Shown: positions 1 through 41,587 of the stretch, piece by piece
How the letters are laid out: the number at the start of each line of letters is the position of its first letter
Numbering within the stretch: position 1 is the stretch's first letter
Virus record (IMG/VR): IMGVR_UViG_3300033145_003233
Span: 434,001 to 498,000 of that record
DNA length: 64,000 bases
Strand: one strand, 5' to 3'
Translations under genes and position numbers: made by a program
The notes under the pieces: model-generated
Database searches by the model: none
The model's input: only the letters and a program-made list of their open reading frames with translations
What the model was told of the DNA's origin: nothing

Positions 1-1513
1 TAAAATCATAATAATTTCTTATCTCATTTACTGTCCTACTAAATTGATTGATAAAATCATGCATGTCCTCAAAAAGCATTGGTAGAATGACATAAAAATT
101 GGGTTTGATATAACCTTTATCTCCATATTTTAATTTTCCCTTTTCCCATTTCTTTCTATCATCATCGTGCAACCTACAAGCCCTTCCAAGATTCTGCAAT
201 AACTTTATTTTCTTACAATATCTAAAAAATAACACTCCAGTTAAAGCCGGAATATCTAACCCACAAGTCATGATGTCAATATGAAAAATAATAGCTCTAT
301 CCGATGATTCCAATCCCTTTATAGAATCCAGCATCCTTCCTTTACTTTTATTACTCACTTTTATATTCTCTTCTTCAGGCATGTCCACGCCCGTGAAAGA
401 GCTAATATAATATAATTTAATATCAGGATACTTTTTCCTCATTTTTTTCATCTCTTTGGAATCCCTTATCCCCTGCATCTCGGCACTGCCATTTGAAACA
501 ACTAACATCTTCGCTCCGATTTTATCAGGACAAAATGATTCTTCTTTTATCTTTTTTTCATGTTCTTCAAACGATTGAAAAATCACTTTAGTTTTTTCAT
601 CAAATTCTCTTTCCCTAATAGGGCTATTAATATCCACCCTATTTGCATTTAATATATCTCTATCAATATCATATGTTGTTAATTTAACATCTGTAGAAAC
701 AAAATGGACAAGAGGCTCTAATATAACCCCAAACTCAATCAAATCTCTTGGAGACATACGCCTACCAAAACCATTTTCATCTTTCTGCCCAAAAAGTTCA
801 TCACCATATATATCAGAATTATTCATTCCCCTACCCTTATATGTTTCTTTATCATCTACATTACCTAATTTTTCTGTGGCTGTCATAAATATCTTTTTCT
901 TGGCAATGATCTCTGTAGCAGAGAATAAGTCGTCTTTAGCCCTTTGAATACCTCGTGGGTCCTCTCTCCCAGGAAGATAATGAGCCTCATCAAAAATACA
1001 TAGGTCGAATTCTAATCCCGATTTTCTAACAACCCCATTAGAATGATATGTAGAAATGACAATAGTATTAACACCTATTCTTTTATTGTTCTCCGCAGTT
1101 TTCTTAATCAATCTAAAATCTAGAGTGCTGATTGGTTTATCCACCCCTGCCCCATTAATGCGATACAAAGCCTCTTCTATTTGATCCGTCATATTCCGAC
1201 TCATATTTTCTGAGCCAACAAAAATAAAATTGACAGGATTCGTCTGATTTTCAAAATATTTCACAAAATCAGATATCCACTGTTTATTAAGCATAAGTCT
1301 TGGAGTAAAGACTATCCCCAAAAACTGATTAAATTTATTTTCATAATTAGAAATTATTCTAAAAAAGACCTCTCTTCCAATCACCCCTTTTCCAGAACCT
1401 GTAGGAAGTATAATTTTACCCTTTTCAAAGTCATCTTTTAAAATACTTTCAACAAAAGATTCTTGGAAAGGATATAAAAAATCATTTTTACATCTATTTT
1501 TTCTTTTGGCCAC
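1..1513 (-). CDS. Superfamily 2 DEAH helicase (type III restriction Res / type ISP-like helicase), 3'-truncated by the window edge; not in the ORF track
   Basis: Manual translation from GTG at 1513 (GGGGG SD-like upstream) gives MAKRKNRCKNDFLYPFQESF...LPTGSGKG (Walker A), VFTPRLML (Ia), IFDEAH (II), MTAT (III), CGLDIP (V), QNLGRACR (VI). No stop was seen in the stretches translated, including positions 60 to 1. Confidence 0.93.
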   Translation of the reverse strand, partial: MAKRKNRCKNDFLYPFQESFVESILKDDFEKGKIILPTGSGKGVIGREVFFRIISNYENKFNQFLGIVFTPRLMLNKQWISDFVKYFENQTNPVNFIFVGSENMSRNMTDQIEEALYRINGAGVDKPISTLDFRLIKKTAENNKRIGVNTIVISTYHSNGVVRKSGLEFDLCIFDEAHYLPGREDPRGIQRAKDDLFSATEIIAKKKIFMTATEKLGNVDDKETYKGRGMNNSDIYGDELFGQKDENGFGRRMSPRDLIEFGVILEPLVHFVSTDVKLTTYDIDRDILNANRVDINSPIREREFDEKTKVIFQSFEEHEKKIKEESFCPDKIGAKMLVVSNGSAEMQGIRDSKEMKKMRKKYPDIKLYYISSFTGVDMPEEENIKVSNKSKGRMLDSIKGLESSDRAIIFHIDIMTCGLDIPALTGVLFFRYCKKIKLLQNLGRACRLHDDDRKKWEKGKLKYGDKGYIKPNFYVILPMLFEDMHDFINQFSRTVNEIRNYYDF

Positions 1514-2183
1514 TATCCCCCCTTTTTCTCAACTGATTTTTCCACGATTCGGCAAAAGAATTCCAGAAAATCCCATTGTCATCTACCCTTCTCCGGATAT
1601 CGCTTCTATTAACCTCTCTGACATCGCTCAACATATGCTCTTTTACATCATAATGAATTTTTTTACCACAATGGATAATAGTCATATTACAAGTATCTTT
1701 AATTCTATCCCTGCCATTTTTTAATTGACATTTTTCGTTAGGGTCAACTCCAAAGCCACCAGCTTCTTTACTCATCGTTGAAAGAGATCTAAAATTAGTA
1801 AGATGGTCTTTATTCGCAGTCAACTCATAGTTAGCTTGGCGATATTTAATCTGTATGGTATGTATCTTACCATTAGTCCCCAATCCAACAGAGTCCACTC
1901 CATAATCATCTTCAGAATCTATAAGTTCATAAGATTCTGGATCAATGCCAATTAACATATCCCCACCAAAGATACGAACTAACATCTCTACAAATAATTC
2001 AAAACCATCCCCCTTATACTTATTTAATATATCATCATCTATCTCTCCATCTCCCCCTGTTGCCTTCTTAATAGCTTGTTTCTCAAGTCGATAGGCAAAA
2101 GTGCTGAATTTAGAACATTCCTTTAAAAGCCCTATAGGATCAATACATCTTCTTAAAAACGGATGAGTTAGTTTAACAATCAC
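1494..2183 (-). CDS. PD-(D/E)XK (Mrr-like) restriction-endonuclease-fold protein
   Basis: GDGFELFVE helix followed by GVD-x12-IQIK, the D...(Q/E)xK catalytic pattern. GTG start with GGAG SD 7 nt upstream. Overlaps the helicase start by 20 nt. Confidence 0.7.
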   Translation of the reverse strand: MIVKLTHPFLRRCIDPIGLLKECSKFSTFAYRLEKQAIKKATGGDGEIDDDILNKYKGDGFELFVEMLVRIFGGDMLIGIDPESYELIDSEDDYGVDSVGLGTNGKIHTIQIKYRQANYELTANKDHLTNFRSLSTMSKEAGGFGVDPNEKCQLKNGRDRIKDTCNMTIIHCGKKIHYDVKEHMLSDVREVNRSDIRRRVDDNGIFWNSFAESWKNQLRKRGDSGQKKK

Positions 2184-2289
2184 TTTATTACTCCATAAAT
2201 TAAGTATTACTTACCTCAACAATATTACTACTTTAACCCTTTTTCTATATTATAGTAAAAAAGCATTTGTCTGGAAAATTATTTACTGA

Positions 2290-2318
2290 ATTATAATCTA
2301 TTTTGAGGATTTTGTCAA
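2290..2318 (-). promoter_or_regulatory. Perfect consensus sigma70 promoter driving the nuclease-helicase pair
   Basis: Minus strand TTGACA (2318-2313), 17-nt spacer, TATAAT (2295-2290), with an AT-rich UP-like tract upstream, in the intergenic gap. Confidence 0.88.
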
Positions 2319-2343
2319 GAGGAATATTGAAATAAAAAATTAA

Positions 2344-3318
2344 CTACATAAATTTTACCCTACTGCGATCAATATCCCTTAATCTCTTATTATTTTTACA
2401 TATATTTTGCGCCCAAGAAAGACTATTTTCACTATTGCTATATATATCCTTGTATGATTTTTCTATCTGTAGATTGTTGGCTACCTCTACTTGCCTTGTC
2501 CCAAATGGATAAACCCTCCCGTCAAATACAGATAAATGCGAAGCCTCGGTCTCGATATATTCTTTACTGACTATAAGTAAAATACTTTTAGGAGATAAAG
2601 GAAAATGCAATTGCAATTTTTCGCTGGCCAATCCTTGTATCAAAGAATCTCCAAAAGCATCTACCACAGGGTTATCAGAAGTGTAAAAAGGCACATCAGC
2701 ACGATTAACTCCAAAAAACCAATAATACTTCTTTGAAGAAAAATTCTTACAAAAAATATCTGCCATATCAAAAATACTATACATGTGATTAAGTTTTATA
2801 TCATCATGATCTAAATTTAAATTACATTTTTCCATCCTCTTTTTTCCAACTATCTCCTCCACTCTATCCCTCATTCCATAAATAATATCTTCAAACTTCT
2901 TTTTTGATTCCTTGCCCCTGGTCCATTGGACTCCAAGATAAAAAGATATATCTCTCTTTATATTAAATGCTTCTTCCTCTCCATAAATAGATTTTAAACA
3001 TTTGATATTTTTATCAGTAAAAATCTCATCTATTTGTTTTACCCTACAAGCCATATTGCCTTCTATTTGAGACAGTAAATCTTCTACACAAAGAGAAGAT
3101 ATTAAAGAATAATTTTTTAAAAATTGCTCTGGCATAGTATAAAAATGCTTTTCTGTTATTTTATCTGAATCTGTAGATGTTTTTTTGATAATATCTTTTT
3201 CCTTATCATAATAAAAAATATCATATTGGTTAGGATTATATCTACTTTTTTTCGCCCATCTTTTTAAATACCAATTCGGGACAAGATGCTGATTTTTATT
3301 TCTATTACTATTGCTCAT
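2344..3318 (-). CDS. DUF4238 family protein
   Basis: N-terminal NQHLVPNWYLKRW, internal FYTSDNPV and FPLSPKSILLI match the recalled family motifs QHYVPxxYL, TSDNPV and PLSP. GGGAG SD. Confidence 0.8.
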   Translation of the reverse strand: MSNSNRNKNQHLVPNWYLKRWAKKSRYNPNQYDIFYYDKEKDIIKKTSTDSDKITEKHFYTMPEQFLKNYSLISSLCVEDLLSQIEGNMACRVKQIDEIFTDKNIKCLKSIYGEEEAFNIKRDISFYLGVQWTRGKESKKKFEDIIYGMRDRVEEIVGKKRMEKCNLNLDHDDIKLNHMYSIFDMADIFCKNFSSKKYYWFFGVNRADVPFYTSDNPVVDAFGDSLIQGLASEKLQLHFPLSPKSILLIVSKEYIETEASHLSVFDGRVYPFGTRQVEVANNLQIEKSYKDIYSNSENSLSWAQNICKNNKRLRDIDRSRVKFM

Positions 3319-3366
3319 TAAGCTAACTCCCTATAAATACAACTCACTATATTATATATCGGCTTT

Positions 3367-4680
3367 TTAACCTATCTGTAATTGCAGCTTTTTAATAGAT
3401 TCTTCTTTATCTTCATTATATTTAATTCTATGAAGAACAACACTATTCTCCCTACAAAACACCCCATCTAATTTATCTTTTTTTTGTGTCCTTTTAAATA
3501 ATTTTTCTACTTTTACCCTATCCTTACAACCAAACCCTATAGGTTCAAAATGCTGTATCCCATCATATTCTACCATAACTTTAACATTATTTTTCTCCAT
3601 CCAAAAATCACAATATCTCTTATGGTTATAATCTCTATATTTATCCCATATTTTTTTATGGGAAATAATATCCCAATCTTTAAAATATTTTTCTAAAATT
3701 TCTTTTACTTTACCCTCATTTTTATATCTACAAGCAGGACAACCATCACCCCTTCCTGTTCTATTTCTAATAACGGCTTCCCATATATGCCCTTGAGAGC
3801 ATACCCACCAAGCTTTTCTTGAACTACCCCGAGTAACAGTATTAGGTGTTAAATCTTGATTTTTTTTATAATCCCATTCTTTAGCTATATCTGGAAACAA
3901 AGTTGCTAAACAATTATCTTTACAAGTCTTTTGTCCAGAACAATAAGGGCAATTAGTCCCAACGCTTCTGCTAAGCGTAGTCGCTTGCCATTCATGCCCT
4001 TTCTCACATATCCACCATACTTTCTTTTTGCTATTTCTTGCAGTTATATTTTTAGGAGTCAAACTTCCATTTTTAACAGAATGCCATTCTTTAGCAACTA
4101 TAGGATTGAGAGTAGCTAAACAATTATCTTTACAAATCTTTTGACCGGCGCAACAAGGACAATTAGTTCCGCTATGTGTTCTACTAGATATCTTAGCTTT
4201 CCACCCATGACCATAAAAACATATCCACCATACTTTCTTTCCGCTGCCATGCACCACAGTTTTAGGAGATTCTCTTTTATTTTTCTTATAATCCCATTCC
4301 TCTGCTATCCTTGGAAATCTATTTTCCAAACAATTATCGTTAGAGACCCTATGCCCAGCACAATAAGGGCAACCATTACCGCCATGAGTCACATTAGTTC
4401 GACAATTGATAGAAGCTTGCCATCTATGTTTTATATTAGAAGAACAAGTCCAGAATGCCTGTTTATGACTACCACTCGTTAATTTTTTAGGATCTAACCC
4501 TAATTTCTTATTCTTTTCACAATCCCATTCCGTTTCAATTAGTTTTTTATGTGTTTCATAAACTGATACTTTTTTAACCCCAACGTGATAAAAATACTTA
4601 GCACAACATTTATGAGAACAATATTTTTTTCTCAATTTTTCTAATTCCTTACCACACCATAAACATTTTTTATTCATCAT
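3367..4680 (-). CDS. Zinc-ribbon (treble-clef, DUF4379-type) repeat protein with C-terminal Vsr-like/EDxHD-type endonuclease domain; homing-endonuclease-like
   Basis: N-terminal CxxC...YCSxxC finger, four EW..KN...W.C..GH.W......GCP.C repeats, and C-terminal YCDFW...VEYDGIQHF...LHRIKY. The start is probably ATG 4680 (GGGGGGTG SD) rather than the track start at 4710. Confidence 0.82.
   Translation of the reverse strand: MMNKKCLWCGKELEKLRKKYCSHKCCAKYFYHVGVKKVSVYETHKKLIETEWDCEKNKKLGLDPKKLTSGSHKQAFWTCSSNIKHRWQASINCRTNVTHGGNGCPYCAGHRVSNDNCLENRFPRIAEEWDYKKNKRESPKTVVHGSGKKVWWICFYGHGWKAKISSRTHSGTNCPCCAGQKICKDNCLATLNPIVAKEWHSVKNGSLTPKNITARNSKKKVWWICEKGHEWQATTLSRSVGTNCPYCSGQKTCKDNCLATLFPDIAKEWDYKKNQDLTPNTVTRGSSRKAWWVCSQGHIWEAVIRNRTGRGDGCPACRYKNEGKVKEILEKYFKDWDIISHKKIWDKYRDYNHKRYCDFWMEKNNVKVMVEYDGIQHFEPIGFGCKDRVKVEKLFKRTQKKDKLDGVFCRENSVVLHRIKYNEDKEESIKKLQLQIG
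3722..4555 (-). repeat. Four tandem ~66-aa zinc-ribbon repeats
   Basis: Repeated DNCLATLxPxIAKEWxxxKN and W.C..GH.W...GxxCPxC blocks in the translation. Confidence 0.9.
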
Positions 4681-4858
4681 CACGATTACACCCCCCATTA
4701 TATGCCACATCTTGCACTCTATTTATATCGACATGAATATTATCATTATATAATCTTCTAATTTCTCCCAAAATTTTATGATATGCCTCATCTGGATCTC
4801 TATAACTCAAAAATAAAGAGGCTAACAGACTAATTCTATCATTATTTTCTTTTAACAT
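4670..4858 (-). CDS. Small hypothetical protein (about 62 aa), first gene of the leftward cassette
   Basis: GGAG SD about 8 nt before ATG 4858. The track start at 4891 lies inside the palindrome/promoter. The stop overlaps the start region of the zinc-ribbon gene. Confidence 0.5.
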   Translation of the reverse strand: MLKENNDRISLLASLFLSYRDPDEAYHKILGEIRRLYNDNIHVDINRVQDVAYNGGCNRDDE

Positions 4859-4882
4859 TTCCATCTCTCCATATAAATATAA

Positions 4883-4915
4883 TAGTATCATTATAATAGT
4901 ATTATAATAATACTA
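4883..4915. promoter_or_regulatory. 33-bp imperfect palindrome, candidate operator
   Basis: TAGTATCATTATAATA-G-TATTATAATAATACTA, with 15 of 16 arm positions complementary. ATAATAGTAT is also repeated at 4879 and 4893. Confidence 0.6.
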
Positions 4916-4918
4916 CAA
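4890..4918 (-). promoter_or_regulatory. Probable sigma70 promoter for the leftward cassette
   Basis: TTGTAG (4918-4913), 17-nt spacer, TATAAT (4895-4890); overlapped by the palindrome. Confidence 0.5.
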
Positions 4919-4985
4919 TATTCCTTCTTTATTTTTAAGAAAATATCAAAAAAATTACGATATAATATAAATAATAGGAGAAAAG

Positions 4986-5135
4986 ATGGCTAAAGAAAAA
5001 AAAGATAAGAATATAGTTGTAATGGTTTCTCAGTCTATGTATAAAGATTTTATAAAATCTTGCGAGAAAGATTATCTAACAATGAGCGAATATTTAAGAG
5101 CATGTATTAGAGAAAAAATAAAAGAAAAGAAATAG
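4986..5135 (+). CDS. Ribbon-helix-helix (CopG/Arc-like) DNA-binding protein, 49 aa; not in the ORF track
   Basis: AGGAG SD at 4976-4980, ATG 4986, TAG ending 5135. MAKEKKDKNIVVMVSQSMYKDFIKSCEKDYLTMSEYLRACIREKIKEKK shows a beta strand (IVVMV), helix A and helix B (MSEYLRACI), typical of RHH proteins. Confidence 0.8.
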   Translation: MAKEKKDKNIVVMVSQSMYKDFIKSCEKDYLTMSEYLRACIREKIKEKK

Positions 5136-5142
5136 ACTATTC

Positions 5143-8100
5143 TTAATTATTTGTAGCTGAAGTTATTGTGATAATGGGAGTAGTAATTGTTGTGCCAAAA
5201 TCCAAACTGTCATGAGGCAGAACCTCGGCCCGATACTGCTGACCCACAAGCACAATACTATTATCTATTGTAGATGTATGAGTTCCCAGACTGGTAGTAA
5301 TATGGCCTCTGTAATCTTCTACATTATATGTAGTTAATAAATTACCATCATGATCATTAAAAATATAAACTGGATCAGCAGGCCATTCTGTTTCTCCTGG
5401 ATTTTTTCTATACCATCTAATTTCTGTCTGGTCAAATTGTCCACTTTCATCCACGTCGCCAATAAAATTTACCTCAAAATCCAGAAAATACCATGTTAAT
5501 ATTACATCATTATGTTCATCATGAACATTGCGAATATAAGACACATTAGAAACAGTAGGAAGGGCATTTTGAACCACAACCACAGGGCTTGTAATAATAT
5601 CCCCTACAACATTACCTGTTTTTGGTATAACCTGAACAAATATAGAGTTAAGCATTCTAAGGCCATAATCCCTATAACTTTCTGTTCCCACTTCATTAGG
5701 CCAAATTTCATGAATCGGAGCTTGACCTACTCCCCTATCCTCTCCATATATTCCTCTCTTAAAGACTTCATCATTAACATACCATATAATCTCTGATTGG
5801 TTTTCTTGTCCATCAGAGAAAAATACTGTGTCTATAGGAGGATAAATAATGGCCTTTAAATCACCAGCTAACCTACTAGTGATCTGACCTTCATTATCAG
5901 ACATTACTGTTATTTGATCTAAAACAGGAGTGGATTCTACAACTTCTGCCATATTAGATTTTACCCTAGAGCTATATAATTCCCCATCGCTTACTTGTAT
6001 CTCAAAATAAATCCTATCTCCTGAATTCAGTATGGAATCAGATTGTTTTTTTATCCATGTCTCAATATCCTGGATATTAGTTAAATCGTCAGGATATGAT
6101 AAAGAAGTATTAACATAAATAGGATCCATTGGATCTGCTATGTCATTCCATTTGGTTAGATTTTCTAAATAATTTATAACGCTTCCATTAATAAACCACC
6201 GTATTCTCCTTTGAGATATATCTTCTTCTTCGAAATTAGAATCATAATACACATAAGAACTCTCAATAGTGCTAAATCTATTAGAAGTTTCATTTTCAAT
6301 AGCCACAGACTGAGCTTCAGGGGCTGCTTTGGCTAATGGTGGTAACAAATCTTTCCCAGTAGTATATAAATAACCAATACCATATATCTCTAATTCATCT
6401 AATTTAGTTTTATTGGTTAATTTCATACCTATTTTATATTCTCCCGCATTAATAATACCTATCTTATAATCTCCATCTTGATAGTCAGAAGATAATGCAT
6501 AATTTAACACTACTATCCCATCCCTAGGATATAATCTATAATAATTAGTTGGAACAACTTCATCTGATTTGTTATATAGAAGAACAGCAGAGAACGGGTC
6601 CCATGAACCGTATTCTGTTTTTAGTGTGAAGAGATCAACTTTTGCAAGAGGTTCTTGTTGAAACTCTGCTATATCTTGAGAGAATCTTATGGGAATTACT
6701 ACTTTTCCATTTTGATTTACTGCCGGTTGAGAATCAAGAGAATAATCGTTCCAGTTGTGGGAATCAGATTTAGCAACTCCGACATCAATCTGATGATCAT
6801 TAATTTCATTTGCGTCTACCGCTAAAGTTATTTGATATGGCTGAACATCTACTTCTTCTTTGTTGAGATATAAATAAGCTACCTTATAAGCATTATATGT
6901 AATTTGAACAGAAGTAAGAGCAGGAGAATCTGGAGTGGCATCAGATACATTATCATTAATACTAGTAATCAACACTATCTTAAATTTTATATATCTTGCC
7001 AATAAATTTTCAAAATCAACCGCATCTGCATAAGTGTAATTAGCATCTATAGCTGTAAAATTATAACCATCAACGCTCGTCTCAATAGCCCATGTAGCAT
7101 TAGAATCCGAAGAAGGGATAGTAAAAGATATTGCGATGTGATTTATTAACGCCTCTTCTCCCAAATCAGCTATAAATTCATATGTCCCATACCCTAGAGA
7201 TCCCACTGTCTCTCTGTAAAATATCCCTATAATATCATCTAGATAAGCTTCATCATTTACCGTAAGAGCTTGACCCCCAGTTAAAAATGATAATTTATTT
7301 ATATTTTTTGTATCAGAAGAGTTAGCCTTAACAGACAAAGTTACTGGCTCTACAATCGCCATATTAGATATCAATACAGGAACATTTTTATCTCCATCAA
7401 TGTCATTAACTTCTGTAATAGCATTATCAAGAGAAGAGATAGAAACATTAGACTCATTATCAGTAAACAAATAAATGGTCTTTCTCTTATCATCAACATC
7501 ATTGTCAGATAAAACTCTTGAAGCGACAACGATTGCATCATACATAGTTGAAGCGCCAAAAGGAGTAAAATTCTGAAGTTTATTTATCTCATCGATAATT
7601 GTTGAACTAGAGCTAGTATTGGTTCCCAAGACAGAACTAACAGATGGAACCCATTCAGAATCATTATAACAATCTATAATAATATTGCTATTTGTTCTTT
7701 TCTTTGTTTTTTGGAACAAAGAAGTTACATCATTAACTTCTTCTTCTTGAGGACTCGTTCCTCTATCAACTGTTCTATTATAAAAAGAACTTCCATTGAG
7801 AGAATAAACAGTTACCTCAATTGATAATTTATATGGACTCCTTATTACTCCTGCCTCTATTTTTATAACAACTGGTTCCTTATTAGTATCTGTAATCTGC
7901 TCATCGGTTCTAATACCTCCCTGAGAAACGATATTGATATTAGCCACAGTAGCTTCCTCTATAGATGATGTCTCTTCAAATAAATCTTCTGAACGAGGCA
8001 ATATAGTTATAACACATCTGCCACTATTTACAGGGATAGAGTCCGAAGTAAAAAGAACAGGATAAACAACGGTTTTGTCTTCCAATTGATTTAAAGTTTC

Positions 8101-8262
8101 TGTTTCTGTTGTTGAAGATTGATCTCTGAATTTTAGAAATCCCCTTACAACCACAGTTAATGGTTCTGTTACATATCTACCACCCTTTTTAATATCTATA
8201 GGTATAGAGACAGATTGTTTCCCATCTATCTTGCAACTGATTGTTTTATATTCATTTCCCAT
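5143..8262 (-). CDS. Multi-domain virion/adhesion protein: C-terminal half of a vWA domain, jelly-roll-like domain, three Ig-like (IRWxxNG-type) domains
   Basis: GASTMYDAI...IYLFTDNESN...LSFLTGG (vWA second half); RYIKFKIVL...SPALTSVQITY; RRIRWFING, IIWYVND and EIRWYRK modules. Confidence 0.65.
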   Translation of the reverse strand: MGNEYKTISCKIDGKQSVSIPIDIKKGGRYVTEPLTVVVRGFLKFRDQSSTTETETLNQLEDKTVVYPVLFTSDSIPVNSGRCVITILPRSEDLFEETSSIEEATVANINIVSQGGIRTDEQITDTNKEPVVIKIEAGVIRSPYKLSIEVTVYSLNGSSFYNRTVDRGTSPQEEEVNDVTSLFQKTKKRTNSNIIIDCYNDSEWVPSVSSVLGTNTSSSSTIIDEINKLQNFTPFGASTMYDAIVVASRVLSDNDVDDKRKTIYLFTDNESNVSISSLDNAITEVNDIDGDKNVPVLISNMAIVEPVTLSVKANSSDTKNINKLSFLTGGQALTVNDEAYLDDIIGIFYRETVGSLGYGTYEFIADLGEEALINHIAISFTIPSSDSNATWAIETSVDGYNFTAIDANYTYADAVDFENLLARYIKFKIVLITSINDNVSDATPDSPALTSVQITYNAYKVAYLYLNKEEVDVQPYQITLAVDANEINDHQIDVGVAKSDSHNWNDYSLDSQPAVNQNGKVVIPIRFSQDIAEFQQEPLAKVDLFTLKTEYGSWDPFSAVLLYNKSDEVVPTNYYRLYPRDGIVVLNYALSSDYQDGDYKIGIINAGEYKIGMKLTNKTKLDELEIYGIGYLYTTGKDLLPPLAKAAPEAQSVAIENETSNRFSTIESSYVYYDSNFEEEDISQRRIRWFINGSVINYLENLTKWNDIADPMDPIYVNTSLSYPDDLTNIQDIETWIKKQSDSILNSGDRIYFEIQVSDGELYSSRVKSNMAEVVESTPVLDQITVMSDNEGQITSRLAGDLKAIIYPPIDTVFFSDGQENQSEIIWYVNDEVFKRGIYGEDRGVGQAPIHEIWPNEVGTESYRDYGLRMLNSIFVQVIPKTGNVVGDIITSPVVVVQNALPTVSNVSYIRNVHDEHNDVILTWYFLDFEVNFIGDVDESGQFDQTEIRWYRKNPGETEWPADPVYIFNDHDGNLLTTYNVEDYRGHITTSLGTHTSTIDNSIVLVGQQYRAEVLPHDSLDFGTTITTPIITITSATNN

Positions 8263-8264
8263 TT

Positions 8265-11200
8265 TTATATATCAAATATAATATCTACAGTACTTTCCTC
8301 CCTAGCCGTAGTATATCCTCCCACCAAATAAATATAAGGAGTTCCTGTTACTCCAGAATAAACAGCACTAGCACCATGCTTTGCTTTCAATAAAGAAGCC
8401 ATGGCTAACGATGGATTATCATCGTAACTGCTTAGATAAGAAACAGTAGAACCTTGAATAGATATTTTTTCTAATATATCAAGACTTGAATCATCATCAT
8501 TAGCTCCTCCCATTATATAATAATCAGAAGTATCATATGTAGACGGATCAAGATCATATCTAACCATTGCTGATTGGAATTTAGGAATAGGAAAATCTCC
8601 GAGCAAACCACTTCCAAAATTAATCCATTCTCCTGAGGAAGGGACAGTAAAAGATTGTGCTATATTAATATAAAAATCTTCTATTGGATAAATAAACTGA
8701 TCATCAGATTCTATGGCCCCATTAAACACTATAATTTTATTATCATAAATTAAAGTTAAAGGGAATATTCTCTGATAAGTGTTTAATTCATTAGTTCTTA
8801 AAGCACCAGAATATTCCCAGCTATCATCACCTATAGAATATCTTAAAATTCTTTTATTATAATTACGTATGCTAAAATTACTTGAACTTATTACAGCATC
8901 CTGTATTCCACCTATAATATATATATAATTATTAGAGAGCACATCACAATATTGAGCAGCACCTAAAGCCACTCCTGTTTTTTCTTCCCATGCTCCTCCA
9001 TCACCAATAGATGGCATATCAGATAGCTGCTCCCAGGCCCCTGTATCAGTATGATAAACTTCAACCAGAGAGCTTACAGATATTTGACCACCCGAAGTAG
9101 AATCTGCACCTATCCCCCCTATTAAATATATATCATTATTTACAACAACAGACATACCTCCAAATCTATGAGATAACATAGGAGGACCAGTAGTCCATGT
9201 TTCTGTTAAAATATCATATATTTCATTCTTGTTAGACACATCTAAACTATTATTTTTCAACCCTCCCATAACATAAATCTTATTCCCTACCACACCAATA
9301 AATGAATCTCCTCTATTTTCCGACATACCAGGAACATGAACCCATTCATTATCAGAAATATTATATCTTGCCATAGTTGATGAAAATGGAGTTTCTTCTA
9401 TTATCTCAGCATCTTCATCAAGAACACTAGGTTCATCTACTAAATTAGGAAGAGTTACAATCTCATCTTTATAATCCAACGTAAGATTAAAAATAGCCCC
9501 GACATGCCTATCTGTTTTTTCATTTTCATCGTAAACAGAATATATTTCTAGATTCTCAGTTATACTATCTTCCTCTGGTATTTTTGTAGCGGCAACAGTC
9601 ACATCCACATAACTATATCCCTCATCTCCATCAGTTTGAGTATAATAAATACTACTGCCAGCTAAAAAGAAATTATTGCTAGAATTATTTCCCATAGCAG
9701 TATAAACAGGAGTGCCATCTGGAACAGGCTCTCCTTTCCATGATACTTGGACTCTAATATCTATATCAGAATTATGAAGCAACAAGGTATCATTATCTTC
9801 ATCTCGAAAACTATTATTACCTACCTCAGTCACAACTCCAACTAAATAATCATCATCTGGATCTCCATCAGATTCACTATAAAAATAATTAGTTACTCTT
9901 CTCCACCTCGCACTTATAGATAATGGTTCTGCCAAACAAATTGGACAAGGTGGGACTCCATTATAAAAAGTTCCTCCTCCAGATAGTACCAGCGGCTGAT
10001 CATTAACAAACAGAGTTGTTGTACCAGAAATATAAATAACCGGATTCCATTCAGGCAAATCGCAGTTCGTCAACATTCCACTATTTCGACCAAGACATAG
10101 ACAATCATTTATTTCCTTATCTCTATCACATTCCCCCTCTGGCACATATATTCTACCAGCACCAGGTACAAATTTATTAACCCTTATATAGATATAAGTG
10201 ATATCTGATTCTTCAGCATCATTTAATTCTATAAATGCGCTACCATTATCTATAAAACCATCATCGCCCACTGTCAAATAACGACTTCCTGTATATGAAT
10301 CTATTTCTTCATAAATCTCTCCATGCAATATCTCTACTTCATTGCCCCCTCCATTTATCTGCACAACCTGTCCAGAATTAAGCATTAATTCCTGCAAGTC
10401 ATCCTGAGTAGCACAGCTTCTAAAACAAGTAGCAGATGCAAAATCAGAAGAAAGAGCCACAGCTGGATTTCTACTAATTTTAATACGCTTATAATGAGAA
10501 CCATCTGCCCATAAAGGATTTTGATCGGCTATCATCCATCCACCACCACCCCATGTCTGAGTAAGCCCTGTTCCTCTCCACCCTCCATCTATCTCCATTA
10601 AAAACCTAGCTTTAAATTTATCATACTCAAGAGGATTATATCTTAATGACACAAGCTGTTTTGCACTAGCTGTCAATCCTTCATAAACTACAGTTACACT
10701 TATTTCATGAGTCTCATCCATCTCACTGTCACTTTTCGGAATAGGCCCTAGAAATACATTCCTAGCTACTCCGCTTCTGGTATAAGAATATACACCATTA
10801 GTAAGAGGGACATTATCAATAGAATAAATAGTTCTAACCTCTTGCCCTTGCAACTGAGAGATACCCCATTGAACAATAGTTTGATCAGAAGGATAAATAA
10901 TCAAAGAACGATCATAATCATTAGTCTCATAATTAGGGTAATCAGGATTAACAATAAATACTGTAGATCGTTGCTCAGACACATCTCTACCATCAACTTT
11001 AGGAACAGAAGCCTGAATATCCATTTTAAGAACACTTTGGAATAATATATATATATCTTTTATAGACGAATAACCTGCTTGAGATGCCTTTACAAACAAC
11101 CTAACTGCCTGAGGCATATCTGGAGCATACAAAGGGATATCAACATATGAAATAGGAGTTTGAACTATTGCCCCGCCATGCCCCACTTGCTCTTCAATTC

Positions 11201-39400: not shown

Positions 39401-40494
39401 GACGGACTATCTATAATTTGTAAAGCATTCCATATATCATCAGACACATGAATTTGAAAATCCTCATATGGCTCTTTGGGAGCTATTACAACATCTTTAT
39501 TAGCTACAATGTAATTATCCAAAACCGTTTTTTGAGTAGCAACAAACACCTTATTTATATTAAACCTAGGATCTCCAGCATCCTCATAATTTTTATCTGG
39601 AGAAGTATAAGCATGTAACGCCATACCATTATTTAATAATGTTACAGAATTATGGAATATTTTACAAATCTTATCTGCATCCCCACCCAAACTAACAGAT
39701 GCTGTACTACCTTCAGCACAACGCATCGGCAAACCAACAGATGGAACCGATATTCCAATATCTATCTCTTCTGGAGCAACTGGGGCCTCAATACAATCCC
39801 CAGGTATACTCCATGCACCAGGGACCACATATGCTGGATCGGCTGGATTACACCTAGGGTCAATCGCCGCATGCATAGCTAGAGTTTGAGGTAAAACATT
39901 AAGATACAAATTAGTAAATTTTTTATTAGTATAATTATCTTCTTCGGAATATAAGTAAACAGGCATTTGCCTTACTGCACTTAGCTCATTACTGCCTACG
40001 ACATCTCTACCTTTAAAATTAATTGACCCTGTACCATTTTTATTAATAATAATTCTAAATAATTTGTCATTTATAGAAATAGTACTCTTACTATTTGGCT
40101 TACCCACGATATGAATAGAACATAATCCATCCATCCCAATAAAAGATGGAGTTATAGAAATTTTCTCACTAAATTCACTCGCCTCATCCTTTATGCTAAA
40201 AATGGAAGGACAAATTTGAGCAGTTTTGTAAGAACCATCTGATTGCTTTTCTTCTATATGGGCAAAAATAGAAATAGCAGCTTGAGACGAATGTTCTGGA
40301 ATATTAAGATTCATTACCCCCATACAGGATTTGTTATCCATACGCTGAAATGATCCAATATCAACCTTAACCCCATGCGTAGCATTTTCCATATTAATGC
40401 GAAATTGTTTTGCCCCAATTTCAGAAATCTCAAATTTCAAAGATTTAGCATCTTCTAATATTCCAGATGGAGGATATAATATAAGATTAGCCAT
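36499..40494 (-). CDS. Large structural protein with dispersed propeller blades and a C-terminal HFR-like domain
   Basis: LHIVWESNRG, LHLSWQSNRD and MITWHDDRDGNYNIY blades; FDAASIADRII...YDTGFIS module; YNFSIEFYHD. The start overlaps the glycosyltransferase stop by 8 nt. Confidence 0.55.
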   Translation of the reverse strand: MANLILYPPSGILEDAKSLKFEISEIGAKQFRINMENATHGVKVDIGSFQRMDNKSCMGVMNLNIPEHSSQAAISIFAHIEEKQSDGSYKTAQICPSIFSIKDEASEFSEKISITPSFIGMDGLCSIHIVGKPNSKSTISINDKLFRIIINKNGTGSINFKGRDVVGSNELSAVRQMPVYLYSEEDNYTNKKFTNLYLNVLPQTLAMHAAIDPRCNPADPAYVVPGAWSIPGDCIEAPVAPEEIDIGISVPSVGLPMRCAEGSTASVSLGGDADKICKIFHNSVTLLNNGMALHAYTSPDKNYEDAGDPRFNINKVFVATQKTVLDNYIVANKDVVIAPKEPYEDFQIHVSDDIWNALQIIDSPSVSDIYVVLFNAMIGFQRIKIVERTTDEYTGVRTLTGEVGNTNVKISNWLFCVNAVFYRSSIYPSLYLDGITIPYIRDGSGNYLQTINISVASNSKYVGLEEETYVYLIAEAVAETKSQLFFYSFSAGRTSLFDSENYGWEQLTDTGNNKNPRAYTDSINNLHIVWESNRGDICQIYYGVIGPSSPSLVSSSVSSYVDKYAEFSSTDTKSFSSIDIPSMERVVGSGSNPIPEYETSDLVPVAWAIEEDTIGSVTERSSSGDLNDLLITVNPVDEEAMAFLPLEIVTSVDNPSVLGVFPYSQFNYQMSFKLAATVNQSNSIVSDDDYNGIIIEEKEIDKLFDSWKDGFTVSIDENVDNQPVYVKNNNKFVIGKSDNIFDRIIPIIGSYKDTPDPSTERFRIEILKSDNNLKDFSLGLLFEKSYFRATNIETPSAYYDRGYGDPYTPEETEVIFTGRAKLVVLIKTEDISDERSDYIIVREFPEILEINELSSYTIILNYKSIGSDEVANVLDTYDRTYNNKFIGTITLLIDDAPKFSQSFISTLSDDYNYFDLGFGVPYGGYYVADKMSPSKFGVFENVSMNLEINDVRITSPTFAHNSAIINLPVSVQDSTELRVIDESSINLPDNTTRYNPSNNLLSLNFRAEEDIVSYASSYDLAGNNFYSVYDVEDIDKISVEFDAASIADRIIIAAGSTVLYDTGFISTPVVSQGFNFDVDIISYDIISVTVESGGDDSSWSFIVYFKKIYSNNGFLQVPITIEGINQSVDVSGGTCNDLHLSWQSNRDRYWNIFYTNSVDKLSPFRYDTKITNTESNSLRPSVSVNRNGSRMITWHDDRDGNYNIYAARSLSGYSCDEDKCERKMLDAFKDYIVECLVSFEFEVDLSGAYNFSIEFYHDSSLTNLYKTISIEGAENRWFLNGDSMSLSYDADDNLLGVVLNNGDTVSISYRPHKDDEIFDMVLYAKLLYSVT

Positions 40495-41587
40495 ATAACT
40501 CTTTCACCATCCCCATAAACATATTGCTAATTTTTGAATAATTAAATCTTTCCCTCACATAAGAATATGCTCTATCAGTTTTAATTTTTATATAATCTTT
40601 GTGATTAATTACATATCTCATAGCTTTTTGTATTTTGTTTACCTCTATAAATGCCCATTTTTTATTTCTAAATTGTGGAATATTATCCATGTTATTATGA
40701 AGAATAAATCCGCTTGGCTCAATTAGAACGGCTGTATCTTCGTTAGCATAATCTTTACACCCAGCATAATTTGTTATAATAACAGGAATCCCCAATGCCA
40801 TACATTGAAGACCAGGATACCCGAATCCTTCTCCCATAGTAGGAGAGATCAAACAATCTACAGATTTTATAAAATTTGGCAAAACCTTTTCATTAAACAC
40901 TTTATTTTCAAAAATTATAGGGGCAAATCCTTTGTTTATTCCCAATTGACCCCTAAGCTTATTAAAATATTGCTCTGCCTTTTTAGGCTTGTCAGTTTTT
41001 ACTAATAATTGGACTCCATCAGTATCTTTAAATTCCCTACCCCATGCTTCCAACAATTGTTTATATCCCTTTCTTTCTTTCCAAATACCTATGAATAAAA
41101 AAGTATATTTATCAAAATTATCTAAAGGAACGATATCTCTATGATAAGTTTCAATATCTATACAATGTGGGATATAATAAAGCGGCTTTTTAATCGTCAT
41201 ATGTGAGAAAATCTTATAATTAAATTGAGAAGGAACTATGATAGCATCGTTTTCATTAAGGATATCCACCCAATGATCGGGAGGCTGAAATGTTTCAAAA
41301 GTAGCAAAACCTATACTTCTATGATGTTTCTTTTTTACCCTTTTTTGGATATTTGGGATACAATGATATATTAAAATTCTTTCAGGATTATCCTTCTTTT
41401 TTGCCATCCTCATAAAAAATTCATATTTTTCATCACTAATAGCTGGTTTAGATGGCCTACCCCCAAAAGTAGTAATTTTGATATCAAAATAACCAGTTTT
41501 TTCTAAAGAAAAAATATAATTTTGAGCTGCTTGGGAATAACCTGACTGATTTAGGAAACATATCCAATTAAGCTTGATTTTTTCCAT
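40487..41587 (-). CDS. Glycosyltransferase, GT-B fold, family 4-like
   Basis: SGYSQAA N-terminal loop, TFETFQPP.HW...DAIIVPSQFN, YYIPHCID, FLFIGIWKERKGY, SPTMGEGFGYPGLQCMALGIPVI. Confidence 0.9.
   Translation of the reverse strand: MEKIKLNWICFLNQSGYSQAAQNYIFSLEKTGYFDIKITTFGGRPSKPAISDEKYEFFMRMAKKKDNPERILIYHCIPNIQKRVKKKHHRSIGFATFETFQPPDHWVDILNENDAIIVPSQFNYKIFSHMTIKKPLYYIPHCIDIETYHRDIVPLDNFDKYTFLFIGIWKERKGYKQLLEAWGREFKDTDGVQLLVKTDKPKKAEQYFNKLRGQLGINKGFAPIIFENKVFNEKVLPNFIKSVDCLISPTMGEGFGYPGLQCMALGIPVIITNYAGCKDYANEDTAVLIEPSGFILHNNMDNIPQFRNKKWAFIEVNKIQKAMRYVINHKDYIKIKTDRAYSYVRERFNYSKISNMFMGMVKELYG

What the first reader, a model, noticed from the sequence alone, without database searches (positions are those of the whole stretch)
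1..5135. Candidate phage-borne defence or competition island at the end of the tail operon
Seen: RHH, small ORF, zinc-ribbon endonuclease, DUF4238, and nuclease plus helicase are clustered, with host-type promoters and Lys-rich composition unlike the structural block. Established: a single-gene DUF4238 anti-phage system was described from P2/P4 hotspots (Rst_DUF4238), and nuclease-helicase combinations are common in defence systems. Inference: a hotspot used to exclude competing phages or degrade host DNA.
Basis: partly seen in the sequence, partly recalled or inferred. Interest (0 to 1): 0.62.

Follow-up and report, generated by a model that had tools for sequence, protein, structure and literature searches.

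The report
Accessory-gene hotspot in a huge phage
Beside the giant fibre-like genes of a 548-kb phage lies a swap-prone stretch holding a selfish homing-endonuclease cassette, a lone DUF4238 gene from a family known to block phages, and a LlaGI-type restriction-modification enzyme split into four genes; these look like tools for competing with other phages, not virion parts.

Summary
The Lys-rich composition holds, and one perfect sigma-70 promoter is present. The window belongs to a 547,943-bp virus record.

Comparison with six related metagenomic contigs splits the region into three units.

1. RHH, small ORF and zinc-finger endonuclease (window 3367-5135) form a homing-endonuclease cassette. 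It occurs three times in this genome. One relative has it at the same site in the opposite orientation, one has only a remnant, and a collinear relative lacks it.

2. DUF4238 (2344-3318) is single-copy cargo. Its only close homologue (45% identity) sits in a neighbouring hotspot of another huge phage. It matches Pfam DUF4238 strongly but misses PADLOC's defence model. Its confident predicted fold has no solved relative.

3. The nuclease and helicase (1-2183) are the first half of a conserved four-gene operon that runs past the window edge. Both find the Type ISP enzymes LlaBIII/LlaGI as their best solved relatives. Two complementary half-degenerate adenine-methyltransferase genes follow.

The hotspot reading is supported. 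Defence or competition is inferred, not shown. The four-piece Type ISP-like system with a two-part methyltransferase is the new element.

The parts
1..1513 (-). SF2 helicase-like ATPase, 587 aa, cut by the window edge (whole gene is L001 14750-16513). Second gene of the four-gene operon.
   Evidence: Pfam ResIII 6e-14, DEAD and Helicase_C. Invariant motifs PTGxGK, DEAH, TAT and QxxGRxxR across 38 homologues. The family profile's best solved relatives are LlaGI (1.3e-26) and LlaBIII (1.5e-26, chain 172-412); the next is XPB at 1e-16. PADLOC REase_MTase_IIG 2e-11 at model positions 185-596.
1494..2183 (-). Mrr-like PD-(D/E)xK nuclease, 229 aa. First gene of the operon; overlaps the helicase start by 20 nt.
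   Evidence: Invariant E62, E66, D93, GVD97, T109, Q111, K113 in 7 orthologues down to 29% identity. AF2 model pLDDT 85.9. Best of 48,161 chains is the LlaBIII nuclease domain, residues 12-169: Z 9.5, rmsd 3.2 A, 132 residues aligned; next are AspBHI and MspJI. Foldseek hits are all PD-(D/E)xK nucleases. phrog_7683 2e-19.
2249..2318 (-). Tandem promoter-like region ahead of the nuclease gene: a perfect TTGACA-17-TATAAT (2318-2290), then TTTCCAGACA...TATAAT (2277-2249).
   Evidence: One of only 10 perfect sites in 548 kb. Matches of 11/12 at the same place in L005, L006 and L007. The TCCAGACA element also occurs in L003 and L006.
2344..3318 (-). DUF4238 protein, 324 aa. Single-copy cargo gene.
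   Evidence: Pfam DUF4238 5.8e-29 over residues 9-297. Single copy in the genome. Only close homologue is P0041, 45% identity, in another huge-phage contig at a different hotspot. 618 distant homologues; 12 invariant residues are all retained. AF2 pLDDT 93.8. No solved fold relative. Only BFVD match is a Stenotrophomonas phage Smp131 protein.
3367..4710 (-). Homing-endonuclease-like protein: an N-terminal Cys4 ribbon, four DUF4379 treble-clef zinc fingers and a C-terminal Vsr/DUF559-like nuclease domain. Likely start is M11 or M12 (4680/4677).
   Evidence: DUF4379 1.1e-66 in 4 stretches. phrog_559, phrog_9084 and phrog_7140 are homing or intron-encoded endonucleases. Invariant CDFW...VEYDGxQHF...KDKLD. 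The third paralogue's C-terminus hits DUF2726 at 5e-4 and DUF559 at 0.17. Three paralogues in the genome. The same architecture is described as a new HEG family in PMC12350094.
4670..4891 (-). Small acidic ORF (73 aa as listed, about 62 aa from the MLKEN start). Its stop overlaps the endonuclease start codons.
   Evidence: Paralogue with 48% identity next to the second endonuclease copy. Sequence reading. No family match.
4872..4936 (.). Divergent control region of the cassette: imperfect palindromes (23-nt arms, 4876-4922; core TAGTATTAT-A-ATAATACTA) and the cassette-specific motif TCCTTCTTTATTTT (4922-4935).
   Evidence: The motif occurs exactly only three times in 548 kb, each time beside an endonuclease copy, and again in the L007 cassette. 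Each cassette has its own palindrome.
4986..5135 (+). Ribbon-helix-helix protein, 49 aa, transcribed divergently from the small ORF and endonuclease. Candidate repressor of the cassette.
   Evidence: NikA-like 0.002. Paralogues at 44-51% identity. The second copy hits RHH_1 at 0.009; the 95-aa ORF before the third endonuclease hits CopG_antitoxin at 0.022.
5143..8262 (-). Conserved flank: 1039-aa acidic giant protein, the last gene of the fibre-like block and the left border of the hotspot.
   Evidence: 45-54% identical homologues in L005, L007 and L018, each followed by different genes.

Best explanation
Window 1-5135 is the right-hand part of an accessory-gene hotspot in a huge tailed phage. 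It lies between the last giant fibre-like gene and a conserved glycosyltransferase gene, and it holds three independent units.

Unit A, a free-standing homing-endonuclease cassette (3367-5135). Four zinc fingers would read a long DNA site and a Vsr/DUF559-type domain would cut it. On co-infection with a related phage that lacks the cassette, the cut would be repaired from the cassette-bearing genome. This would copy the cassette and neighbouring DNA across. The divergent RHH protein would repress the cassette's promoter through the cassette-specific palindrome. The small acidic ORF is translationally coupled to the endonuclease; its role is open.

Unit B, a lone DUF4238 gene (2344-3318). It lies directly downstream of the endonuclease and is probably co-transcribed with it. 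It would act as a single-protein anti-phage effector like the P2-hotspot DUF4238. Its biochemistry is unknown.

Unit C, a Type ISP-like restriction-modification machine encoded as four genes: Mrr-like nuclease, SF2 translocase, and two methyltransferase-like proteins. MT398 carries the NPPY catalytic half and a target-recognition region but lacks the SAM-binding loop. MT194 is a stand-alone SAM-binding half. The operon would be read early from sigma-70-type promoters. The methyltransferase pair would mark the phage's own DNA. The translocase and nuclease would destroy unmarked DNA, whether the host chromosome or rival phages.

Shown here: gene identities, fold and profile relationships, copy numbers, presence or absence among relatives, and promoter positions. 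Inferred: every activity, the targets, the pairing of MT398 with MT194, and the repressor role of RHH.
For: Hotspot:
- L005 is collinear with the window (2035-aa gene 50% identical, 1039-aa gene 54%). There the nuclease gene follows after a 210-nt spacer, with no cassette and no DUF4238.
- L007 has, at the same site, the endonuclease (55% identical) in the opposite orientation, other small ORFs and two extra methyltransferase half-genes.
- L006 has an RHH gene and a 25-residue remnant of the endonuclease C-terminus just ahead of the operon.
- L018 keeps the backbone but carries DUF4238 in the next hotspot and lacks the operon in that stretch.

Cassette:
- Three copies in the genome. The first two share RHH, small ORF and endonuclease.
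- A 14-15-nt motif occurs exactly only beside the three copies and in the L007 cassette.
- Each cassette has its own palindrome.
- The domain architecture matches a published HEG family.

DUF4238:
- Pfam E 5.8e-29.
- A family member from a P2 hotspot protects strongly against T7.
- The only BFVD fold match is a protein of Stenotrophomonas phage Smp131, which I recall as P2-like.

Operon:
- The four genes are separate and of the same sizes in seven loci: the window, L003, L005, L006, L007 (fourth gene cut by the contig end), L020 and L021.
- The nuclease model's best match among 48,161 chains is LlaBIII residues 12-169, Z 9.5.
- The helicase profile's best PDB hits are LlaGI and LlaBIII at 1e-26, in the adjoining chain region 172-412.
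- MT398 and MT194 match adjoining, non-overlapping parts of the same PADLOC methyltransferase models; for mad2, positions 266-353 and 354-441.
- hhalign shows that the MT398 class is a canonical Eco57I-type enzyme with a 7-residue gap at the DPxxGxG loop. MT194 is an intact N-terminal half (E 2.3e-17).
- Genes encoding only the catalytic half, followed by an N-half gene, occur in L007 and L022.
- Sigma-70-type promoters of 11/12 or better stand before the operon in four phages.
Against: - No activity was measured.
- The window's DUF4238 protein fails PADLOC's DUF4238-Pers model (E above 0.1), whereas 48 of 80 homologues pass. It is only 23-33% identical to most of the family.
- The operon is present in all five closer relatives examined for it, so within that group it behaves as a stable module rather than as cargo.
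- Distant kin of the helicase (24% identity) are stand-alone helicases of T4-like cyanophages.
- The MT398 profile finds no solved relative, and the MT194 profile finds M.BseCI rather than LlaGI. The methyltransferase part is therefore not of Type ISP descent.
- The complex prediction for MT398 with MT194 gave no verdict.
- Without its glycine loop, MT398 may simply be an inactive DNA-binding subunit.
- GC content gives no sign of recent foreign origin.
- The Lys-rich composition is what intracellular DNA enzymes show in any case.
- The palindromes lie in 25-30% GC DNA, where such repeats arise easily.
- Only a 21-kb stretch of L018 was seen.
Confidence: 0.55

Rival explanations
1. Selfish DNA only. 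The homing-endonuclease cassettes spread for their own sake and create the presence/absence pattern. DUF4238 is a hitch-hiker with some other role or none. Nothing in 2184-5142 excludes other phages except through the marker exclusion that homing itself causes.
For: Three cassette copies, an orientation flip in L007 and a decayed remnant in L006 all fit the gain-and-loss cycle of homing endonuclease genes. DUF4238 fails the PADLOC defence model. No homologue was detected by tblastn in 50,697 phage records.
Against: DUF4238 keeps all 12 family-invariant residues and folds with pLDDT 93.8, so it is not decaying. A 45% identical copy is kept in another huge phage without any cassette beside it. 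Both points argue for selection on the gene itself. A family member has a demonstrated anti-T7 phenotype.
Confidence: 0.2
2. Housekeeping DNA metabolism. The nuclease and helicase act in recombination, repair or host-DNA recycling. The methyltransferase proteins only shield phage DNA from host restriction. On this reading the operon is a core replication or anti-restriction module, not a weapon.
For: The operon is conserved in gene order in seven loci. Distant helicase kin are stand-alone helicases of cyanomyoviruses, in P-SSM4 next to dam. Early sigma-70 promoters also suit replication genes.
Against: The best solved relatives of both the nuclease and the helicase are Type ISP restriction enzymes, by ten orders of magnitude for the helicase. 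UvsW scores only 2e-6. The operon is absent from the syntenic stretch of L018, and no helicase homologue in the search list lies on a 460,978-bp contig. A second ResIII helicase belongs to the conserved backbone and could fill the housekeeping role. In L020 the operon sits among TnpB, IS200 and resolvase genes.
Confidence: 0.15
3. Addiction module. RHH, the small acidic ORF and the endonuclease form a toxin-antitoxin-like unit, with nuclease as toxin and RHH or the acidic protein as antitoxin. The unit would stabilise the neighbouring DNA or trigger abortive infection.
For: An RHH gene accompanies all four endonuclease copies seen (window, second and third copies, L007). The 95-aa ORF before the third copy weakly matches CopG_antitoxin. 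The small ORF is acidic and the endonuclease basic, pI 4.7 against 9.5.
Against: Four sequence-reading zinc fingers plus a Vsr/EDxHD-type domain are the hallmark of site-specific homing enzymes. The small ORF is missing from the third copy and from L007. Insertion between conserved genes in either orientation is homing-like.
Confidence: 0.08

Closest known systems
[quoted passage not shown]
   Same: The order of functions is the same: Mrr-family nuclease, SF2 helicase-like ATPase, adenine methyltransferase, then a recognition region (PMC4666363 abstract). The nuclease model's best structural match is LlaBIII 12-169. The helicase profile's best sequence matches are LlaGI and LlaBIII in the adjoining region.
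   Different: Here there are four separate genes instead of one chain of about 1,570 aa. The methyltransferase part is not LlaGI-like and is itself divided into two complementary half-degenerate proteins. The system is carried by huge phages rather than a bacterial plasmid. No coupler domain was identified.
Rst_DUF4238 (PADLOC 'DUF4238-Pers'), the single-gene anti-phage system from the P2 hotspot (Rousset et al. 2022, PMC9122126)
   Same: A single protein made of one DUF4238 domain, carried in a variable hotspot of a phage genome.
   Different: The window protein does not reach PADLOC's model. It is carried by a huge, apparently lytic-type phage rather than a temperate P2-like prophage. No phenotype is known for it.
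Homing endonucleases with CapR/DUF4379/DUF723-like repeats and an EDxHD/Vsr-like nuclease domain (Nucleic Acids Res 2025, PMC12350094)
   Same: Three to five DNA-binding repeats of about 60 aa, followed by a Vsr-like endonuclease domain of about 100 aa.
   Different: Those were found inside phage group II introns. Here the gene is free-standing and intergenic, and it travels with an RHH gene, a small acidic ORF and a conserved 14-15-nt motif.
Free-standing homing endonuclease genes of T4-like phages (seg and mob genes); from my own knowledge, not tested here
   Same: Intergenic insertion between conserved genes, presence/absence among relatives, and several paralogues per genome.
   Different: Different nuclease families (GIY-YIG, HNH). 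Those genes have no dedicated RHH regulator.
Natural two-subunit DNA methyltransferases M.EcoHK31I and M.AquI (named in PMC2836561 and PMC3404938)
   Same: The methyltransferase fold is divided between two polypeptides.
   Different: Those are cytosine-5 enzymes. Here it is an Eco57I/TaqI-type adenine enzyme. One partner keeps a crippled copy of the half that the other supplies. In some phages several catalytic-half genes precede a single SAM-binding-half gene.

Membership tests
Type ISP restriction-modification | All functions in one polypeptide | tested here: not met
   Four ORFs of conserved sizes (217-232, 560-786, 395-404 and 181-203 aa) in seven loci.
Type ISP restriction-modification | N-terminal Mrr-family PD-(D/E)xK nuclease | tested here: met
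   Invariant D...QxK motif. Best structural match is LlaBIII 12-169, Z 9.5.
Type ISP restriction-modification | SF2 helicase-like ATPase following the nuclease | tested here: met
   Profile hits to LlaGI and LlaBIII at 1e-26. Helicase motifs are invariant. The gene lies directly downstream of the nuclease gene.
Type ISP restriction-modification | Gamma-class N6-adenine methyltransferase with a SAM-binding motif and NPPY in one domain, followed by a recognition domain | tested here: not met
   NPPY is in MT398, whose motif I loop is deleted. The intact motif I is in the separate MT194. No PDB match to the LlaGI methyltransferase.
Type ISP restriction-modification | ATP-driven translocation and cleavage of unmodified DNA | not testable with these tools
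   Needs biochemistry.
Rst_DUF4238 / DUF4238-Pers anti-phage system | Pfam DUF4238 domain spanning the protein | tested here: met
   E 5.8e-29, residues 9-297 of 324.
Rst_DUF4238 / DUF4238-Pers anti-phage system | Match to the defence-system HMM (PADLOC PDLC03000) | tested here: not met
   No hit at E up to 0.1, although 48 of 80 homologues hit it.
Rst_DUF4238 / DUF4238-Pers anti-phage system | Acts as a single gene, with no conserved partner | tested here: met
   The neighbours differ completely between the window and L018.
Rst_DUF4238 / DUF4238-Pers anti-phage system | Protects against phage infection | not testable with these tools
   Needs cloning and a phage challenge.
Homing endonuclease (DUF4379-repeat plus EDxHD/Vsr type) | Repeated DNA-binding modules plus a C-terminal Vsr-like nuclease domain | tested here: met
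   Four DUF4379 repeats. Conserved D...ExDGxxH...D/K motif. Weak DUF2726 and DUF559 hits for a paralogue. PHROG homing-endonuclease families.
Homing endonuclease (DUF4379-repeat plus EDxHD/Vsr type) | Presence/absence at a fixed site between conserved genes in related genomes | tested here: met
   Absent in L005, inverted in L007, a remnant in L006.
Homing endonuclease (DUF4379-repeat plus EDxHD/Vsr type) | Cuts the cassette-free allele and is copied into it | not testable with these tools
   Needs a cleavage assay or mixed infection.
Ribbon-helix-helix repressors | N-terminal strand and two helices matching RHH profiles | tested here: inconclusive
   All matches are below the curated cut-offs: NikA-like 0.002, RHH_1 0.009 for the paralogue, RHH_9 0.13 for L006. 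The sequence pattern fits by eye.

The most novel reading that the evidence does not exclude
The operon is a previously undescribed, taken-apart form of a Type ISP restriction-modification enzyme. Its adenine methyltransferase works only as a pair. MT398, or in other phages one of several NPPY-plus-recognition 'catalytic half' proteins, must borrow the SAM-binding half from a single shared small subunit, MT194. A phage could then change or multiply its methylation and restriction specificity by adding catalytic-half genes, as in L007 and L022. It would use the system early in infection against host DNA and rival phages.
Probability: 0.3. Interest if true: 0.75.

Novelty: new variant of a known kind. 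Interest (0 to 1): 0.6.

Why it matters
Hotspots that collect defence genes are known from temperate P2/P4-type elements. This case shows the same organisation in a huge (548-kb), apparently virulent-type aquatic phage, with a homing-endonuclease cassette as a plausible vehicle for moving cargo.

It places a divergent DUF4238 gene, whose mechanism is still unknown, in a new setting. It also supplies a confident model with no solved relative, which is a good target for structural and biochemical work.

It uncovers a widespread phage module in which a Type ISP-like nuclease and translocase is paired with a two-part adenine methyltransferase. If the pairing is real, it is a natural split adenine methyltransferase with exchangeable specificity subunits. 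That would interest restriction-modification biology and could be useful for engineering targeted methylation.

Tried and rejected
- Complex prediction of MT398 with MT194: no verdict, score 0.00, controls not run. It counts neither for nor against binding.
- Direct phmmer of the helicase, MT398 and DUF4238 against PDB sequences: nothing useful. The endonuclease matched only a DUF4379 protein and its C-terminal domain alone matched nothing. Only the helicase family profile worked. The MT398 and MT194 profiles gave nothing or one weak M.BseCI hit.
- DUF4238 fold searches: Foldseek against PDB gave a best E of 0.29. The exhaustive VIA search gave a best Z of 3.9, which is noise. No mechanism could be read from the structure.
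- blastn of window 1-5200 and tblastn of DUF4238 against 50,697 phage records: no match. MT398 matched one unannotated uncultured phage.
- IMG/VR scans with the helicase and with the endonuclease alignment: only distant loci. The useful relatives came from exact-protein look-ups instead.
- Frameshifted pseudogene of a single-chain enzyme: rejected, because the four ORFs recur with the same sizes in seven loci.
- Giant virus of eukaryotes: considered because one distant helicase hit lies in a GVMAG record. No NCLDV capsid match (but the control genomes did not ring). Tight gene packing, IF3, tRNAs and PHROG tail hits favour a tailed phage.
- Seven Pfam capsid, terminase and sheath probes were all negative.
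- Whole-record search of the L018 and L005 contigs: not possible.
- Sequencing-run search: one sediment metagenome with a 0.06 word share, not informative.
- The cassette motif as a general phage promoter: rejected, because its three exact copies all lie beside endonuclease genes.

Full report
**Setting.** The window is bases 434,001-498,000 of a single 547,943-bp contig that the tools class as an IMG/VR virus record, with CheckV completeness 100. GC content is 33.6%. There are 29 tRNA genes and no SSU rRNA. Almost all genes in the window lie on the minus strand. Positions 5143-64000 encode a run of giant acidic proteins of 1039, 2035, 1958 and 1971 aa and more. The last frame continues outside the window to about 5,140 aa. 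These proteins carry Kelch, Laminin_G_3, fn3, FG-GAP and Ig-like domains and match no PHROG tail family. Genes just upstream on the same strand do match PHROG minor tail protein (8.8e-15), tail assembly protein and virion structural protein. 'End of the tail operon' is therefore plausible but unproven. Seven Pfam probes for capsid, terminase and sheath found nothing.

**The observation.**
- The helicase is cut by the window edge. The whole gene encodes 587 aa (L001 14750-16513).
- Island proteins are Lys-rich (10-14% K, pI 6.2-9.5), apart from the acidic small ORF (2.7% K, pI 4.7) and the RHH (22% K). The giant block is Lys-poor (2.4-7.5% K, pI 4.2-5.2). The one exception inside the giant block is a glycosyltransferase.
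- GC content does not differ, so the contrast reflects intracellular DNA enzymes against surface proteins, not foreign origin.
- Promoter-like sites as a whole are at the chance level. However, a perfect TTGACA-17-TATAAT lies at 2318-2290 in the 160-nt gap before the nuclease gene.
- Only ten perfect sites exist in the 548 kb. Matches of 11/12 stand at the equivalent place in L005, L006 and L007.

**What lies beyond the window edge.** Downstream of the helicase come two more genes in the same orientation.
- MT398 (398 aa) matches Eco57I and carries an NPPY motif.
- MT194 (194 aa) matches N6_Mtase and carries motif X (EVFTP) and motif I (DPACGNGNFL), but no NPPY.
- A GT2 glycosyltransferase gene follows.

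**Relatives.** A word-index search with the helicase found 48-63% identical proteins on long metagenomic contigs. Their loci are L003 (351 kb), L005 (141 kb), L006 (79 kb) and L007/L008 (63 kb). In all of them the four genes recur as separate ORFs of the same sizes, in the order nuclease, helicase, MT398-like, MT194-like. The same four-gene set also occurs in two less related contigs, L020 (183 kb, beside TnpB, IS200 and resolvase genes) and L021 (253 kb). The split into four genes is therefore conserved, not a sequencing or decay artefact.

**The hotspot.**
- L005 is collinear with the window. Its 2035-aa and 1039-aa homologues (50% and 54% identical) are followed, after a 210-nt spacer, directly by the nuclease gene. 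Everything in window 2184-5142 is missing there.
- L007 has, at this same junction, a 55% identical endonuclease in the opposite orientation, other small ORFs, and two extra genes homologous to residues 116-398 of MT398.
- L006 has a different upstream context. Just before the operon it still carries an RHH-like gene and a 25-residue remnant of the endonuclease C-terminus.
- The only close homologue of the DUF4238 protein (P0041, 45% identical) lies on a 461-kb contig (L018). That contig keeps the backbone: 1994-aa and 1013-aa genes, GT2, GT1, GT2, a second helicase and IF3. There DUF4238 lies between GT2 and GT1, and neither the four-gene operon nor any endonuclease is present in that stretch.
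- Two adjacent hotspots therefore flank the GT2 gene, and their content differs in every genome seen.

**Unit A, the cassette.**
- tblastn within the genome shows the trio RHH, small ORF and endonuclease a second time, 10 kb away, at 44-50% identity. A third endonuclease copy lies at 388-389 kb, preceded by a 95-aa ORF with a weak CopG-type match.
- The endonuclease has an N-terminal Cys4 ribbon and four DUF4379 zinc fingers. It also has a C-terminal domain of about 110 aa that is nearly invariant among four homologues: CDFW...VEYDGxQHF...KDKLD. I read this as the Vsr/DUF559 signature, and weak DUF2726 and DUF559 hits agree.
- PHROG families for homing and intron-encoded endonucleases match it.
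- A 2025 paper describes exactly this build as a new homing-endonuclease family: three to five CapR/DUF4379/DUF723-like repeats plus an EDxHD/Vsr-like domain (PMC12350094).
- The 127-nt control region between the small ORF and RHH holds cassette-specific palindromes.
- It also holds the motif TCCTTCTTT(T)ATTTT. Exact copies of this motif occur only three times in 548 kb, once beside each endonuclease copy, and again in the L007 cassette.
- The stop of the small ORF overlaps the likely endonuclease start (ATGATGAATAA), which suggests translational coupling.

**Unit B, DUF4238.**
- The protein is a clear member of Pfam DUF4238 and is single-copy in the genome.
- An exhaustive HMMER search found 618 relatives, mostly 23-33% identical. 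In an 80-sequence alignment, 12 positions are invariant: H11, L18, K39, F59, Q131, R134, W200, S214, D215, P217, P240 and N281.
- The AlphaFold model is confident, with pLDDT 93.8 and pTM 0.91. It has no solved structural relative.
- The single significant match among predicted viral structures is a protein of Stenotrophomonas phage Smp131, E 2.9e-12. I recall Smp131 as a P2-like phage.
- Rousset et al. showed that a single DUF4238 protein from the P2 hotspot protects strongly against T7 by an unknown mechanism (PMC9122126).
- PADLOC holds a model for that system (DUF4238-Pers). 48 of the 80 homologues match it, but the window protein does not.
- I therefore file the protein under the Pfam family, not under the defence subfamily.

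**Unit C, the operon.**
- The nuclease keeps an Mrr-type E...D...QxK signature in seven orthologues.
- Its model (pLDDT 85.9) was aligned to 48,161 representative chains. The best match is the N-terminal nuclease domain of the Type ISP enzyme LlaBIII, residues 12-169, with Z 9.5, rmsd 3.2 A and 132 residues aligned. Next come the Mrr-like domains of AspBHI and MspJI.
- A profile of 38 helicase homologues finds LlaGI and LlaBIII as the best PDB sequences at 1e-26, in the chain region that directly follows that nuclease domain. The next hit is XPB at 1e-16, and T4 UvsW scores only 2e-6.
- Two independent methods thus point to the same enzyme family and the same domain order.
- The methyltransferase part differs. 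MT398 and MT194 match adjoining, non-overlapping segments of several PADLOC methyltransferase models.
- Profile-profile alignment shows that the MT398 class is a canonical Eco57I-like enzyme with a 7-residue gap exactly at the DPxxGxG SAM-binding loop. MT194 is a stand-alone, intact copy of that N-terminal half, E 2.3e-17.
- The MT398 family is large, with 1,641 hits. It contains canonical forms, loop-less forms, and forms of about 285 aa that begin at FDVVIGNPPY.
- In eight of eight loci, counting the window itself, the NPPY-bearing gene or genes are followed by an N-half gene. These include L022, a small unrelated phage with two catalytic-half genes.
- This complementary pattern suggests a two-part methyltransferase. 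The one direct test available, a complex prediction, gave no verdict.

**Judgement.** The structural and comparative claims are well supported. They are a hotspot, a mobile homing-endonuclease cassette, DUF4238 as cargo, and a four-gene Type ISP-like operon extending beyond the window. The functional claims are inference from family membership and context. They are exclusion of rival phages, degradation of host DNA, self-methylation and RHH autoregulation. However, it merges three different units, misses the methyltransferase half of the operon, and treats a selfish element as defence.

Noticed in passing
window 52468-64000 and L027 1-3887: The last open frame of the window runs on beyond its end. 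Together the two pieces form one frame of about 5,140 codons. A GC peak of 0.446 lies at window 53-54 kb inside it.
   Followed up: no
window 40487-41587: A Lys-rich glycosyltransferase gene (phrog_2170, 7e-32) sits inside the block of acidic giant proteins. It may glycosylate them.
   Followed up: no
L001 9089-12181; L006 16914-20231; L005 17595-20878: The second hotspot (between GT2 and GT1) holds small ORFs on the opposite strand. One 106-aa family is tandemly amplified in L006. In L005 eleven other small ORFs take its place.
   Followed up: partly
L019 3581-3766 and 6635-6805 (genome 382581-382766, 385635-385805): Two further RHH-like genes, paralogues of the cassette's RHH. Each lies directly upstream of an uncharacterised ORF (193 and 271 aa) and may form a regulator-effector or toxin-antitoxin pair.
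   Followed up: no
L028 5361-6377 (genome 523361-524377): A LAGLIDADG homing endonuclease gene (phrog_11023, 4e-20). A second kind of homing endonuclease is therefore present in the genome.
   Followed up: no
window 2249-2277; L003 about 9240-9275; L006 about 8915-8950: A conserved TCCAGACA element followed about 17 nt later by a TATAAT-like box. It lies between the sigma-70 promoter and the nuclease start and is shared by phages only about 50% identical in protein. It may be a second promoter or an operator.
   Followed up: partly
L007 7474-8334 and 8316-9185; L022 8001-9742: Methyltransferase-like genes that begin directly at motif IV (FDVVIGNPPY) and lack any SAM-binding half. They occur in tandem and are followed by a separate N-half gene.
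   Followed up: partly
L001 11-520 and genome 65-183 kb: The phage encodes translation initiation factor IF-3 (IF3_N 5e-26) and 29 tRNAs, mostly in one cluster.
   Followed up: no
whole 548-kb record: Pfam models for HK97 and NCLDV capsids, four terminase domains and tail sheath find nothing. The head and packaging genes must be very divergent.
   Followed up: partly
L020 1-1505 and 9738-10826: In a 183-kb contig the four-gene operon is flanked by IS200-type Y1 transposase, two TnpB (Cas12f1-like) genes and a resolvase. The operon can therefore sit in mobile surroundings.
   Followed up: no
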